The notes under the pieces are model-generated. The model did no database searches. It saw only the letters and a list, made by a program, of their open reading frames with translations, and was not told the DNA's origin. This document shows positions 1,290 through 59,252 of a DNA stretch of 64,000 nt, piece after piece. The stretch covers positions 496,001-560,000 of the forward strand of contig NW_026782192.1 in NCBI RefSeq assembly GCF_031769215.1. Reading direction: 5' to 3'. Position 1 is the first letter of the stretch, and every line of letters begins with the position of its first letter. This DNA is from Ylistrum balloti (lineage: Eukaryota). The position numbers were made by a program, and so were the translations under genes.

Positions 1290-3604
1290 ATGAGGGAAAT
1301 CGTACATATGCAGGCTGGCCAGTGCGGCAACCAGATCGGAGCCAAAGTACGTATTTACCAGTATATCTTTCCTCAATTAACACAAAGTTTATTCTTTGTA
1401 ACGATCAGTATAGTCAATGTATACATGTCATGTTGTATAGTTTACAAGGACTTGTAAGTTTTCAAAAGATTTGAAACTAATTACCAGTAACTAGTAGAAT
1501 CTTCAAAGGTTATTTCATTATTTCAATAATATCAGTGAAAAGAAATGACGATATCAAAGCTGTGTTTGATCTTCATTGTTTAAATGTGAAGAAAGAGAAA
1601 TAGAAATATGTTTATTTCTATCAATTACACAACAACAAATTTCAATATCACATGTGTTGATTTTTAGTTCTGGGAGGTTATTTCTGATGAACACGGAATT
1701 GACCCCACCGGTACATACCACGGAGATTCTGACCTTCAGTTGGAGAGGATCAACGTGTACTACAATGAAGCCACAGGTAACACATTTAAGATTAAGAAGT
1801 GCGATAAAAAGATCAAAAGAAAAGTCAGGAATTAAACATTGACTGTAGTTTTCTGACGATAAGCCTGTATGTTTGTGATAGAATTTACCGTAGAATTTCG
1901 ACAAAATCATTACTGTTACAAATAAGGCAGTCACCAGTGTGTGTATATCTATGGATTGTCTGCTGAAAAATAGGAAACGGTTAACAAAAAGGCATTAACC
2001 TTCAAATTGACAGATAAGTAAAACAAATACAAAAAAGTAATAATATTTCAAAATCAGATAACGCACTTTGATTAAGATATCTACTAAGAGTTATCATTAG
2101 TAAGTGGATTGGGACACACAGTTTGGATTTAACTATTGTTAAAGTAGACAAACTCCTGACATGAATACTTGACAAAACTCTAAAATATATGTAAATGATA
2201 TCAGTCATGTCATCCGCCGAAAATCCACATGTTGATGTTTGTTGCTTTTACAGGAGGCAAATATGTTCCCCGAGCTGTCTTGGTTGATCTGGAGCCCGGA
2301 ACCATGGACTCCGTCAGATCTGGTCCTTTCGGACAAATCTTCAGACCAGACAACTTTGTGTTCGGACAGAGTGGTGCTGGAAACAATTGGGCTAAGGGAC
2401 ATTACACAGAAGGTGCTGAGCTCGTAGACTCTGTTCTTGATGTTGTTCGTAAAGAATCAGAGAGCTGTGATTGTCTTCAGGGATTCCAGCTTACACATTC
2501 TCTTGGTGGCGGTACCGGCTCTGGAATGGGAACACTCCTCATCTCCAAAATCCGTGAAGAATACCCCGACAGGATCATGAACACCTTCTCTGTTGTACCA
2601 TCACCCAAGGTAAATATAATTATGAACGACATGGCCAATTTTTGTTTAACCATTGTTGATATTTTATTATTTTGAAACTGATTTATATTCTAATATTACT
2701 CCTTTACCTTTTCGAAAAACATATTGAGAATGTTTCCAGTCAAATATGTTCACTTGAAAATACTATTTAATATCTTGATATTTTTCAGGTATCAGACACC
2801 GTTGTCGAACCATACAACGCTACCCTCTCCGTCCACCAACTTGTTGAGAACACAGATGAAACCTACTGTATCGACAACGAGGCTCTTTACGACATCTGCT
2901 TCCGTACTCTCAAGCTGACCACACCCACATACGGTGACTTGAACCATCTCGTCTCCGCCACCATGTCCGGAGTCACCACCTGTCTCCGATTCCCTGGTCA
3001 ACTGAACGCCGATCTCCGTAAATTGGCTGTCAACATGGTTCCCTTCCCCCGTCTCCACTTCTTCATGCCTGGTTTCGCTCCTCTTACATCTCGTGGTAGC
3101 CAGCAGTACAGGGCTCTTACCGTCCCAGAGCTGACCCAACAGATGTTCGACGCCAAGAACATGATGGCTGCCTGTGATCCTCGCCATGGACGTTACCTGA
3201 CCGTCGCTACCATGTTCCGTGGACGTATGTCCATGAAGGAAGTTGATGAGCAGCTCTTGAACGTCCAGAACAAGAACAGCAGCTACTTCGTTGAATGGAT
3301 CCCCAACAACGTGAAGACCGCTGTCTGTGACATCCCACCACGTGGTCTTAAGATGTCTGCTACCTTTGTTGGTAACAGCACCGCCATCCAGGAGCTCTTC
3401 AAGCGTATCTCCGAACAGTTCACCGCTATGTTCCGTCGTAAGGCTTTCTTGCATTGGTACACTGGTGAGGGTATGGACGAGATGGAGTTCACAGAGGCCG
3501 AATCCAACATGAACGACTTGGTGTCCGAGTACCAACAGTACCAGGATGCCACCGCCGAGGAGGAGGGAGAGTTCGAGGAGGAAGAGGGAGAAGAAGAAGC
3601 TTAG
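1290..3604 (+). CDS. TUBB: Beta-tubulin copy 1, 445 aa (exons 1290-1346, 1668-1776, 2254-2609, 2789-3604)
   Basis: Begins [19 protein letters not shown]; has the [12 protein letters not shown]-binding loop; GT/AG at all three introns; exon lengths 57+109+356+816 keep frame to TAG; tail [20 protein letters not shown]. Symbol is family-level only. Confidence 0.97.
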
Positions 3605-3760
3605 ATACCCGAAACTCTGGAACTCTATAGACCTGATTTCAAAGCTTGGTTATAACATCTAGTCAAAACTTTCGTCAGAATTTTGATCTCCGGATTGAAT
3701 ATATTTTGTTATGTTTAAGAAAAGATTTTGAAATAATGGCGATTTGATTTACAAGCCTGG

Positions 3761-56600: not shown

Positions 56601-59252
56601 TGAATTTGTATTGAAATATAATTTTCACTTGTCTGTAATGAACAATGTTTGAATGCACGAGATAACGACGTGATCTCGTCAAAAAAGTAAATATTCATTT
56701 AGACGTGCTAAATCGCCTTCAGTAATTGTATATTAGCAGACTCATTTAGACGTGCTCTATCGCCTTCAGTAATTGTATATTAGTTGATCATTAGTTTTAT
56801 ATTAGCAGACTCATTTAGATATGCTAAATCGCTCTTAGTACTGTTATATTAGCAGACACATTTAGACGTGCTAAATCGCACACGGTACTTTTATATTAGC
56901 AGACTCATTTAGACGTGCTCAATCGCCCACGGTACTTTTATATTAGCAGACTCATTTAGACGTGCTAAATCGCCTTCAGTAGATTTATATTAGCAGACTC
57001 ATTTAGATAGCGATTATATTCATCATATTTTACAACGGCTGGAAAATATTAACTCGATGGTACATTAGGACAAGGGTAGTATTTCATTTGCATGTATCTA
57101 TCCTTAGTCAGGGGTAACGCTCATTCAAACAATACACTGGTTTTCTTTCTAGTTCTGGGAGGTTATTTCTGATGAACACGGAATTGACCCCACCGGTACA
57201 TACCATGGAGATTCTGACCTTCAGTTAGAGAGGATCAACGTGTACTACAATGAAGCTACAGGTAGGTAGGACAATGTCATCCTTCCAGTAGAAAAAGATA
57301 AAAACTTTACACCAGACAATGGCTTTTATAACGGCCAGTATCTATAGCAACCCAGTCATTAGGGACAGTGCAGCACATCTGGTCGATTTTACTTACTAGG
57401 TCCATAGTCCAAGTTGTTTAACATAAGGAAAATTTGACGGAGGATGACCAAAAGTGTTTACGATTTCACATTGTGCCCTAGTCATTTGTTGTGTATATGA
57501 CAAACACACACATAAGAGGCACGTGTCTTCCTTTTATTAAAGTGTTGAAAAACAATAACATGTTTTATTGCTGATAAACAATATAAAAAAGGACAAAAAC
57601 ATTCAAAGACACAAACACTTATTAATACCAATAGTCCTAAATCTTCTGTCTGTAACACCGTATCAGGTCACGTTTGACCGATATTCCTAAACCTTCTGTC
57701 TGTAACACTGTATCAGGTCTCGTTTGACCATTGTTCCTAAACCTTCTGTCTGTAACACTGTGCCAGATCTCGTTTGACCGATGTTCCTAAACCTTCTGTC
57801 TGTAACACTGTACTAGATCTCGTTTGACCAATGTTCCTAAACCTTCTGTCTGTAACACTGTATCAGGTCTCGTTTGACCGATGTTCCTAAACCTTCTGTC
57901 TGTAACACTGTATCAGGTCACATTTGACCGATGCTCATAAACATGGAATCAATTCTGATGCACAAATTTTCGTTTTTTTCAGGTGGTAAATATGTTCCCC
58001 GAGCTGTCTTGGTTGATCTGGAGCCCGGAACCATGGACTCCGTCAGATCTGGTCCTTTCGGACAAATCTTCCGACCAGACAACTTTGTGTTCGGACAGAG
58101 TGGTGCTGGAAACAACTGGGCTAAGGGACATTACACAGAAGGTGCTGAGCTTGTAGACTCTGTTCTTGATGTTGTTCGTAAAGAATCAGAGAGCTGTGAT
58201 TGTCTTCAGGGATTCCAGCTTACACATTCTCTTGGTGGCGGTACCGGCTCAGGAATGGGAACACTCCTCATCTCCAAAATCCGCGAAGAATACCCCGACA
58301 GGATCATGAACACCTTCTCAGTTGTACCATCTCCTAAGGTAGGTGCTTACACTTGGAAACACTGTCGTTAAATTTCATATCCGATTTATTTACAATTTGA
58401 TCTAGGTAATTTTTCTAACTCAATATTTTTGAACAGGTATCAGATACCGTGGTCGAACCATACAACGCCACCCTGTCCGTCCACCAACTTGTAGAAAACA
58501 CAGATGAAACCTACTGTATCGACAACGAGGCTCTTTACGACATCTGCTTCCGTACCCTCAAGCTGACCACACCCACATACGGTGACTTGAACCATCTCGT
58601 CTCCGCCACCATGTCCGGAGTCACCACCTGTCTCCGATTCCCTGGTCAACTGAACGCCGATCTCCGTAAATTGGCTGTCAACATGGTTCCCTTCCCCCGT
58701 CTCCATTTCTTCATGCCTGGTTTCGCTCCTCTTACATCTCGTGGTAGCCAGCAGTACAGGGCTCTTACCGTTCCAGAACTGACCCAACAGATGTTCGACG
58801 CCAAGAACATGATGGCTGCCTGTGATCCTCGTCACGGACGTTATCTGACGGTTGCTGTTGTCTTTCGCGGTCGTATGTCCATGAAAGAGGTTGACGAGCA
58901 GCTCCTGAACGTCCAGAACAAGAACAGCAGCTACTTTGTTGAATGGATCCCTAACAACACAAAGATTGCTGTCTGTGACATTCCGCCACGTGGTCTCAAG
59001 ATGTCTGGTACCTTCATTGGTAACAGCACCGCCATCCAGGAGCTCTTCAAGCGTGTCTCTGAGCAGTTCACCGCTATGTTCCGTCGTAAGGCTTTCTTGC
59101 ATTGGTACACTGGAGAGGGTATGGACGAGATGGAGTTCACAGAGGCCGAATCCAACATGAACGACTTGGTTTCCGAGTACCAACAGTACCAGGATGCTAC
59201 AGCAGACGAGGAAGGAGAATTTGATGACGAGGAACAAGATGATGAGACATAA
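50623..59252 (+). CDS. TUBB: Beta-tubulin copy 6, 445 aa (exons 50623-50679, 57153-57261, 57983-58338, 58437-59252)
   Basis: Begins [10 protein letters not shown]; 6473-nt repeat-filled intron 1 and 98-nt intron 3; V315, V316, T349, I351, G365, V381; tail [15 protein letters not shown]. Assignment of exon 1 to this gene rests on it being the only exon 1 between copy 5 and the exon at 57153. Confidence 0.94.
51269..53090. repeat. 39/38-bp minisatellite in copy 6 intron 1, ~47 copies
   Basis: Unit GACAGATTAC(C)TGTCCTAGTTCGTGTACATCAACAGGT(A/C/G). Confidence 0.98.
53946..55092. repeat. 41-bp minisatellite in copy 6 intron 1, ~28 copies
   Basis: Unit TACTTTTACAGCCACTTCTCGCTGTACCGAATGTCCAGGCT. 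Confidence 0.98.
55705..55823 (-). mobile_element. Decayed tRNA-derived SINE fragment
   Basis: Minus strand reads CGCCT-TTCACCT-AGGCG (anticodon-arm-like), then CCGGGGGTTCGATTCTCGG (T-arm with B-box). Downstream CCACGTGGGTTCTCGCCAGGTACTTCTTGGCGCTTCCACC resembles, from memory, the GTGGGTTTTCTCCGGGTACTCCGGTTTCCTCCCAC domain of V-type SINEs. No A-box visible. Confidence 0.6.
56095..56528. repeat. 54-bp minisatellite in copy 6 intron 1, 8 copies
   Basis: Unit CTGAGAGTGAAAGTGATCGTTAACCCTGGAGTATCGACGATGGTTCCACGGGTG. Confidence 0.95.
56694..57007. repeat. 47-bp minisatellite in copy 6 intron 1, ~6 copies
   Basis: TATTAGCAGACTCATTTAGACGTGCTAAATCGCCTTCAGTAATTGTA; AGACGTGC at 56701 and 56748. Confidence 0.9.
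57635..57933. repeat. 50-bp minisatellite in copy 6 intron 2, 6 copies
   Basis: Unit CCTAAACCTTCTGTCTGTAACACTGTATCAGGTCTCGTTTGACCGATGTT. Confidence 0.95.

What the first reader, a model, noticed from the sequence alone, without database searches (positions are those of the whole stretch)
1290..59252. Homogenisation confined to exons and skipping specific segments
Seen: exon 2 (109 nt) differs by only 1 nt between copies 1 and 2 and between copies 2 and 3, and by 3 nt between copies 1 and 5. Exon 1 (57 nt) differs by 10 nt between copies 2 and 3 and by 11 nt between copies 1 and 5. Introns diverge immediately beyond GT/AG. Codons ~216-306 and ~393-429 are near-identical even at synonymous sites in all six copies, while codons ~312-390 of copies 3, 4 and 6 and the tails are freely diverged. 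The unhomogenised patches of copies 3 and 4 are rich in A/T-ending codons. Inference: recurrent gene conversion bounded by intron heterology and by selection on isotype-defining residues. The 5'-most exon escaping could reflect a minimum tract length or cDNA-templated conversion.
Basis: partly seen in the sequence, partly recalled or inferred. Interest (0 to 1): 0.7.

Follow-up and report, generated by a model that had tools for sequence, protein, structure and literature searches.

The report
Scallop beta-tubulin genes homogenised by conversion
Six neighbouring beta-tubulin genes, part of a 14-gene scallop array, keep nearly identical coding exons while their introns are unrelated, because short stretches of coding DNA are repeatedly copied between the genes; this is a clean but ordinary case of gene conversion.

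Summary
The window carries six intact four-exon beta-tubulin genes on the + strand. They are copies 5-10 of a 14-gene array spanning about 165 kb on one contig.

- **Introns:** identity falls from 0.9-0.97 in exons to random (about 0.3) within 10 nt of every splice site.
- **Exon 4:** codons 226-300 and 391-420 are almost invariant at synonymous sites. Exon 1, codons 175-225, patches within 306-392 and the tails differ.

Synonymous-site selection does not explain this. Unlinked paralogues in the same genome, and beta-tubulin genes of three other taxa with nearly the same protein, differ at 40-80% of synonymous codons in the same stretches.

The best reading is recurrent, short, DNA-templated interlocus gene conversion. 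It needs homology at both ends of a tract, so it stops at the unrelated introns. A cDNA template is not supported: all introns are kept, linkage does not cross exon junctions, and one exon 2-intron 2-exon 3 unit was copied whole.

This is a new member of a known kind. The scan has already reported gene conversion elsewhere in this genome.

The parts
1290..3604 (+). Beta-tubulin copy 1 (T05 of the array): exons 1290-1346, 1668-1776, 2254-2609, 2789-3604
   Evidence: Motif scan, GT..AG introns and intact frame. Pfam PF00091 and PF03953 match the exon 3 and exon 4 translations.
10368..13560 (+). Beta-tubulin copy 2 (T06): exons 10368-10424, 11947-12055, 12218-12573, 12745-13560
21653..25859 (+). 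Beta-tubulin copy 3 (T07): exons 21653-21709, 23796-23904, 24035-24390, 25047-25859
29082..33670 (+). Beta-tubulin copy 4 (T08): exons 29082-29138, 31770-31878, 32145-32500, 32855-33670
39644..45421 (+). Beta-tubulin copy 5 (T09): exons 39644-39700, 41336-41444, 42946-43301, 44603-45421
50623..59252 (+). Beta-tubulin copy 6 (T10): exons 50623-50679, 57153-57261, 57983-58338, 58437-59252
31770..31878 (+). Private, unhomogenised exon 2 of copy 4 (25-28 of 109 nt and 7 residues differ from the other copies). The private state ends at the exon 2/3 junction.
   Evidence: The next difference from the array majority is at codon 75, 54 nt into exon 3.
23905..24034 (+). Intron 2 of copy 3, the only intron in the window with a relative. 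It is 87-88% identical to intron 2 of T01 and T04 outside the window, which are 99% identical to each other.
   Evidence: Similarity starts at the intron 1/exon 2 boundary and stops at the exon 3/intron 3 boundary.
2942..3181 (+). Homogenised core of exon 4 (codons 226-305) in copy 1. The equivalent stretches are 12898-13137, 25200-25439, 33008-33247, 44756-44995 and 58590-58829.
   Evidence: Synonymous-codon difference is 0.00-0.13 among the six copies and 0.01-0.15 among all 14. 57 of the 75 codons at 226-300 are invariant in all 14 copies.
25440..25700 (+). Unhomogenised patch of copy 3 (codons 306-392), dense in synonymous and replacement differences and rich in A/T-ending codons
32858..32983 (+). 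Unhomogenised 5' part of exon 4 of copy 4 (codons 176-217)
33323..33355 (+). Unhomogenised patch of copy 4 (codons 331-341, includes N332H)
58848..58985 (+). Unhomogenised patches of copy 6 (codons 312-328 and 349-357; A315V, M316V, V349T, T351I)

Best explanation
The six genes belong to an old tandem array of 14 beta-tubulin genes. Their coding exons 2-4 are kept alike by recurrent, short, DNA-templated interlocus (non-allelic) gene conversion.

How it most likely works:
- A conversion tract needs homologous sequence at both ends.
- Purifying selection on the protein keeps the exons similar enough to pair. The introns, spacers and UTRs drifted long ago to complete heterology.
- Tracts can therefore only begin and end inside exons, and homogenisation stops at the splice sites.
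- Most tracts are short (tens of bases up to an exon length) and lie within one exon.
- A tract anchored in two neighbouring exons copies the intron between them. This happened for exon 2-intron 2-exon 3 in T01, T04 and T07.

Segments that diverged beyond a threshold are no longer converted and stay as islands. These include the 57-nt exon 1, exon 2 of copy 4, the blocks in T14, and the patches around isotype-specific residues in copies 3, 4 and 6.

Shown here: the pattern, the mosaic, the lack of synonymous constraint elsewhere, and the DNA-level transfer of an intron.

Inferred: the tract lengths, the homology threshold, and selection protecting isotype residues.
For: 1. Exons are 90-97% identical, while introns are at random identity within 10 nt of the splice sites. 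Intron lengths differ up to about 50-fold (192 to 10568 nt for intron 1).
2. Synonymous-codon difference among the 14 copies is 0.01-0.15 in codons 31-120, 226-300 and 391-420. Against unlinked paralogues U2 and U3 it is mostly 0.4-0.8 in the same regions. Against three other taxa it is 0.4-0.8 by 15-codon window for E and 0.39-0.55 over the whole coding sequence for F and H. One of those taxa differs by 1 residue in 430 from T11.
3. Invariant codons of the core use mixed synonymous codons. Leu uses CTC, CTT, CTG and TTG; Pro uses CCT, CCC and CCA. Identity is therefore by copying, not by convergent codon choice.
4. In the GENECONV-type test 43 of 91 pairs had p<=0.01. 57% of informative site pairs fail the four-gamete test. 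The nearest paralogue changes from segment to segment.
5. T01, T04 and T07 share exon 2-intron 2-exon 3 as one DNA unit, bounded by the outer splice sites.
6. Linkage (r2) is 0.143 within exons at <=30 nt. It is at baseline (0.081) across exon junctions at the same cDNA distance.
7. The inverted gene T11 is homogenised like the rest. Conversion explains this; unequal crossing-over does not.
8. There is a gradient: array copies are most alike, then U1, then U2, then U3. There is a weak distance effect for exon 3 (r=0.38, p=0.003) and for codons 226-300 (r=0.33, p=0.017).
Against: - Per-copy bases are therefore unverified, and short-read polishing could have removed some sparse true differences in exons.
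- No orthologous array from another scallop was obtained. The classical test, paralogues closer than orthologues, was made only against distant taxa.
- The PHI test is only modestly significant (p=0.02).
- The p value for the junction effect comes from non-independent site pairs.
- How a 109-nt exon flanked by heterology is converted efficiently is inferred, not shown.
Confidence: 0.85

Rival explanations
1. Selection on synonymous sites (codon usage in highly expressed genes, or an RNA-level element) keeps the exons alike without any copying.
For: The array majority has a higher GC3 (0.59) than the divergent copies and patches. Codons 151-165 are somewhat conserved even against U3, at 0.32.
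Against: U2, U3 and three other taxa encode the same residues but differ at 40-80% of synonymous codons in the homogenised stretches. Invariant codons are a position-specific mix of synonymous codons. Variants are shared in patches between changing partners. Private blocks sit inside otherwise identical genes.
Confidence: 0.04
2. Assembly or polishing artefact: short reads that map to several paralogues overwrote true copy-specific bases in exons, where reads multi-map, but not in the unique introns.
For: The pattern (exon-limited, mosaic, very short linkage) is what such an artefact would also give. No read check could be made. No listed run holds more than 0.59 of the sampled words of copy 3.
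Against: Multi-mapping needs copies that are already about 95% alike, so the artefact cannot create similarity out of the 40-80% synonymous divergence seen elsewhere. Copy-specific variants, private blocks and replacement differences survive in every exon. An intron (T01/T04 intron 2, 99% identical) is shared too. A foreign assembly shows exon-limited similarity between some of its tubulin paralogues.
Confidence: 0.05
3. cDNA- or RNA-templated conversion: spliced transcripts of one paralogue serve as the repair template, which would homogenise exons only and spare the 5'-most exon.
For: Introns are spared and exon 1 escapes. Tubulin genes are probably highly expressed in the germ line (own knowledge, not tested).
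Against: All 17 genes keep all three introns, whereas tracts crossing a junction on a cDNA would delete introns. Linkage does not cross junctions. Private blocks of T08 and T14 end at the exon 2/3 junction. Intron 2 was co-transferred in T01, T04 and T07. The 3' tails and UTRs, expected to be best covered by cDNA, are not homogenised.
Confidence: 0.05
4. Recent duplications or unequal crossing-over, with exceptionally fast intron turnover.
For: The genes are in tandem. T03 and T04 share about 30 nt after the stop codon.
Against: Every intron and spacer is unrelated right up to the splice consensus, and each spacer carries different minisatellites. Exon 1 is as diverged among array copies (0.46-0.47) as against other taxa (0.41). 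The inverted T11 is homogenised too.
Confidence: 0.01

Closest known systems
Mosaic divergence by interlocus gene conversion in tandem paralogues (HMA4 of Arabidopsis halleri; bioRxiv 10.1101/2025.10.29.685298, read)
   Same: These are tandem copies whose exons and synonymous sites stay homogenised while long introns escape. 5' exons next to long introns carry fixed differences. The explanation given there is conversion whose rate falls with divergence, plus purifying selection on the protein.
   Different: HMA4 has three young copies whose introns are still alignable (0.5-6% divergence). The scallop array has 14 copies, all introns fully unrelated, and exons of 109 nt homogenised on their own.
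Concerted evolution of beta-tubulin paralogues in Leishmania (PMC1533823, listed; title and the start of the abstract seen, paper not read)
   Same: Same gene family, tandem paralogues, concerted evolution of coding sequence.
   Different: The Leishmania case concerns protozoan parasites, whereas this is an animal array of intron-bearing genes with distinct C-terminal tails. The gene structure and expression mode of the Leishmania genes were not checked here.
Islands of divergence that persist under gene conversion (GOT1 paralogues of Tigriopus, PMC3728101, abstract only, listed; 'terminator mutations' of Walsh as cited in PMC3966223)
   Same: Unconverted patches surround replacement sites, and conversion produces new combinations of variants. 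PMC3966223 also states that conversion is usually reported for exons because introns fall below the homology threshold.
   Different: In Caenorhabditis tracts often include the very short introns. Here that is the exception: one intron in three genes.

Membership tests
Beta-tubulin (Tubulin/FtsZ superfamily) | Tubulin GTPase domain and tubulin C-terminal domain | tested here: met
   PF00091 scores 123.8 bits on exon 3. PF03953 scores 149-152 bits on exon 4 of five of the six copies (1, 3, 4, 5, 6); copy 2 was not scanned.
Beta-tubulin (Tubulin/FtsZ superfamily) | MREI N-terminus, GGGTGSG nucleotide-binding loop, acidic C-terminal tail | tested here: met
   All three are present in all six copies.
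Concerted evolution by interlocus gene conversion | Similarity between paralogues is confined to patches and is far higher than in the flanking non-coding DNA | tested here: met
Concerted evolution by interlocus gene conversion | Mosaic relations: fragments of shared variants longer than chance, and conflicting site patterns | tested here: met
   43 of 91 pairs had p<=0.01. 57% of informative site pairs are incompatible. PHI p=0.02. The nearest copy changes by segment.
Concerted evolution by interlocus gene conversion | Synonymous sites are free to diverge where conversion does not act | tested here: met
   Unlinked U2 and U3, and taxa E, F and H, differ at about 0.4-0.8.
Concerted evolution by interlocus gene conversion | Paralogues within the species are closer than orthologues between related species | tested here: inconclusive
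   Only distant taxa without assignable orthology were obtained. Protein searches were flooded by other animals' tubulins.
Concerted evolution by interlocus gene conversion | Per-copy bases confirmed by reads anchored in unique flanks | not testable with these tools
cDNA-mediated (retro) gene conversion | Tracts run across exon junctions, and introns are lost in converted copies | tested here: not met
   All introns are kept. r2 across junctions is at baseline. An intron was co-converted.

The most novel reading that the evidence does not exclude
Each exon is homogenised on its own by very short patches, at or below about 50-100 nt. Linkage is lost beyond about 30 nt, and a 54-nt converted piece in T14 lies between a diverged block and an intron. 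This happens across a 165-kb, 14-gene array that includes an inverted member. That would imply an unusually low homology requirement for ectopic repair in the scallop germ line. In the more radical version, transcripts serve as templates for within-exon patch repair; the junction tests cannot exclude this for tracts that stay inside one exon. The same process would shuffle isotype residues (positions 124, 200, 315/316, 330, 349, 365, 368, 381) into new combinations.
Probability: 0.15. Interest if true: 0.6.

Novelty: new member of a known kind. Interest (0 to 1): 0.35.

Why it matters
- **A clear natural example.** Gene conversion, purifying selection and intron heterology together produce exon-limited homogenisation. 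The array has many copies, saturated introns and sharply bounded islands that escaped.
- **Practical consequences.** Trees and duplication dates for mollusc tubulin isotypes built from coding sequence will be wrong. Only exon 1, the introns, the tails and the private patches carry history.
- **Mapping and polishing.** Short-read mapping, polishing and expression counts for these genes need copy-specific anchors.
- **A way to measure conversion.** The array could be used to estimate tract length and homology threshold in a bivalve once long reads and sister-species arrays are compared.

Tried and rejected
- **Whole and part exon 4 protein searches.** The hit lists were flooded by tubulins of all animals and gave no scallop orthologue. 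Primate and other vertebrate hits were not followed.
- **Exon 3 protein search.** It returned 120 exon-3-type open frames from unnamed ENA, JGI and Logan contigs. None carries intron-derived ends like any scallop copy, so none is a close relative.
- **Exact look-ups of two exon-3 open frames of the window.** Nothing is on record.
- **Three foreign loci sets.** These are distant taxa, useful only as a control for synonymous constraint.
- **Read laying on copy 3.** Later searches used exon 3 references or protein ids only.
- **Joined spliced model.** It was never sent to a search tool. Searches went exon by exon, by reference. In scripts the codons were handled per exon and the split codon 56 was dropped.
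- **Explanations rejected.** Unequal crossing-over and recent duplication were rejected because spacers and introns are unrelated and the inverted T11 is homogenised. Codon-usage convergence was rejected because.
- **Literature.** Searches found no description of tubulin concerted evolution in bivalves.
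Full report
**What is there**

The window has no N. It holds six beta-tubulin genes on the + strand. Each has four exons of 57, 109, 356 and 813-819 nt. GT..AG introns lie after codon 19, inside codon 56 (phase 1) and after codon 174. Pfam confirms the tubulin GTPase and C-terminal domains on exon 3 of copy 1 and on exon 4 of five copies.

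Earlier notes of this scan call the genome a scallop. I did not test that.

A search of the window's own assembly shows that the six genes are copies 5-10 of a larger array.
- The array has 14 genes (T01-T14) on one contig, spread over about 165 kb. Thirteen are on one strand and T11 is inverted.
- Three genes elsewhere (U1, U2, U3) have the same intron positions.

**Check of the observation**

Exon 2 differs by 1, 1 and 3 nt, and exon 1 by 10 and 11 nt, for the named pairs.
- Mean identity between copies is 0.9-0.97 at exon ends. It is about 0.5-0.65 in the first ten intron bases, which carry the splice consensus, and 0.25-0.35 (random) beyond.
- blastn finds no similarity between any introns, upstream regions or downstream regions of different copies. 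There are two exceptions: intron 2 of T01, T04 and T07, and 34 nt after the stop codon of T03 and T04.
- Among the six copies the share of synonymous codons that differ is 0.47 in exon 1. It is 0.00-0.13 in codons 226-300 and 0.08-0.09 in 391-420. It is 0.24-0.40 in 166-225 and 301-390.
- Those patches are A/T-ending. GC to AT versus AT to GC departures run 53:17 in copy 3 and 54:13 in copy 4.
- Copy 4 has a private exon 2, with 25-28 of 109 nt different. This was noted separately by the scan.

**Is it synonymous constraint?**

No, for three reasons.
- The unlinked paralogues U2 and U3 encode the same residues but differ from the array at mostly 0.4-0.8 of synonymous codons, in the very windows where the array copies differ at 0.01-0.15.
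- Three unnamed foreign organisms in ENA assemblies have beta-tubulin genes with introns at the same places. One gene differs by a single residue in 430 from T11. Over the coding sequence they differ from every array copy at about 0.4-0.55 of synonymous codons. By 15-codon window, organism E differs at 0.34-0.80, including the homogenised stretches.
- Inside the invariant core the codons are a position-specific mix. Four Leu, three Pro and three Arg codons are used. Only 62% of degenerate invariant codons use the commonest codon for their amino acid. Convergent codon optimisation would not give that pattern.

**Is it copying between genes?**

- A GENECONV-type permutation of polymorphic sites gives 43 of 91 pairs with p<=0.01, where about one is expected, and 28 with p<=0.001.
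- 57% of informative site pairs fail the four-gamete test, and PHI gives p=0.02.
- The nearest paralogue of each window copy changes from segment to segment. For copy 1 it is T06 in exon 1, T03 at codons 57-90, T02 at 119-147, T01 at 148-174, and T12 at 175-215 and 331-360.
- Replacement variants at positions 124, 200, 315/316, 330, 349, 365, 368 and 381 occur in many combinations.
- The inverted T11 is as homogenised as the others. Every spacer carries its own minisatellites. This fits conversion, not unequal crossing-over.
- Similarity falls in the order array, U1, U2, U3. There is a weak effect of physical distance for exon 3 and for codons 226-300.

**DNA or cDNA template?**

Four observations favour DNA.
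1. All 17 genes keep all three introns.
2. T01, T04 and T07 (window copy 3) share exon 2, intron 2 and exon 3 as one unit. Intron 2 is 99% identical between T01 and T04 and 87-88% identical to T07. Similarity begins at the intron 1/exon 2 boundary and ends at the exon 3/intron 3 boundary. This is what a tract anchored in two exons would copy.
3. Linkage between informative sites is r2 = 0.143 at <=30 nt within an exon and about 0.09 beyond. Across exon junctions it is 0.081 at the same cDNA distance, close to the independence value that I estimate at about 0.08 for 14 sequences. The site pairs are not independent, so the p value of 1.5e-4 is approximate.
4. Private blocks end at the exon 2/3 junction. 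Copy 4 differs from the array majority in 20 of the 36 whole codons of exon 2 (20-55), up to codon 55, and then not at all until codon 75. T14 is array-like in codons 38-55 and private again from codon 57.

The tails and 3' UTRs, which a cDNA would cover best, are not homogenised.

**Why the pattern looks as it does (inference)**

Purifying selection on the protein keeps the exons similar enough to remain substrates. Introns and spacers lost all homology and now act as barriers. Tracts therefore start and stop in exons.

Exon 1 is only 57 nt, and its copies differ about every six bases. It is probably below the homology needed and has escaped for good. The same applies to exon 2 of copy 4 and the blocks in T14.

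Synonymous departures cluster near replacement sites: 27% lie within 8 codons, against 16% expected (p<0.0005). This fits either selection against conversion of isotype residues or plain co-survival in unconverted blocks. The data do not separate the two.

The higher GC3 of the homogenised family is compatible with GC-biased conversion or codon selection. This was not tested further.

This scheme matches a published model and data for tandem HMA4 genes, in which exons stay homogenised, long introns escape, and 5' exons next to long introns carry fixed differences. It also matches remarks on exon-limited conversion and 'terminator mutations' in a Caenorhabditis review.

**What could not be done**

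- The look-up of sequencing runs listed runs of several coded organisms that hold at most 0.59 of the sampled words of copy 3.
There is therefore no read-level or expression evidence, and the polishing artefact remains untested.
- That artefact can only act on copies that are already about 95% alike. It could exaggerate the pattern but not create it.
Searches were made exon by exon, by reference.
- No orthologous array from another scallop was reached.

**Verdict**

This is a new, very clean member of a known kind: concerted evolution by interlocus gene conversion, limited by heterology and by escaped islands. The scan has already reported gene conversion in other gene families of this genome. 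Literature searches found tubulin concerted evolution in trypanosomatids but none described in bivalves.

Noticed in passing
G000:C335:454772-620800 (outside the window; loci L031-L042): The array is much larger than the window shows. It has 14 beta-tubulin genes, one of them inverted (T11), which has a 10.6-kb intron 1 and a non-acidic tail extension (GQTTYDHTKQ). Three more genes with the same intron positions lie on contigs C546, C136 and C58.
   Followed up: yes
L048-L051 (ENA ERZ22147071, contigs ctg31422l and ctg30030l): An unnamed organism has a beta-tubulin cluster with introns 2 and 3 at the scallop positions but exons 1 and 2 fused, that is, intron 1 is absent. Some of its paralogues are recent segmental duplicates (96% over 3.4 kb). 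Others are similar mainly in the exons.
   Followed up: partly
window 32816-32851: Intron 3 of copy 4 ends with a duplicated acceptor plus the first bases of exon 4 (CAG|GTGTCTGACA), 36 nt upstream of the real acceptor. It is in frame and without a stop. If used, it would add 12 residues ([12 protein letters not shown]).
   Followed up: no
window 3933-9129, 15851-20562, 26130-28447, 34904-38690, 41835-42875, 46226-48999, 51269-55093, 56095-57975, 59972-64000: Every spacer and several introns carry long minisatellite arrays (units of 22-60 nt, up to about 4 kb). The arrays are unrelated to one another, and several give long spurious open reading frames.
   Followed up: partly
L052, L053 (ENA ERZ26052449): A foreign beta-tubulin gene shares three of the seven 'private' exon 2 residues of copy 4 (S35, F51, S55). 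Part of copy 4's exon 2 may therefore be an old isotype state rather than a recent remodelling.
   Followed up: partly
L043 (G000:C546:32001-42000): U1 lies on another contig but shares near-identical patches with the array (codons 91-120, 151-165, 226-240, 286-300, 376-430). It is diverged in codons 16-90. Either conversion reaches it, or the contig lies close to the array.
   Followed up: partly
window 24035-24390 and 25047-25859: Copy 3 carries C127S, I155V, Y200F, A315V, M316I, V349T, A365G, I381V and F389Y. No exon-3 product with both S127 and V155 was found among the 120 best database fragments.
   Followed up: partly
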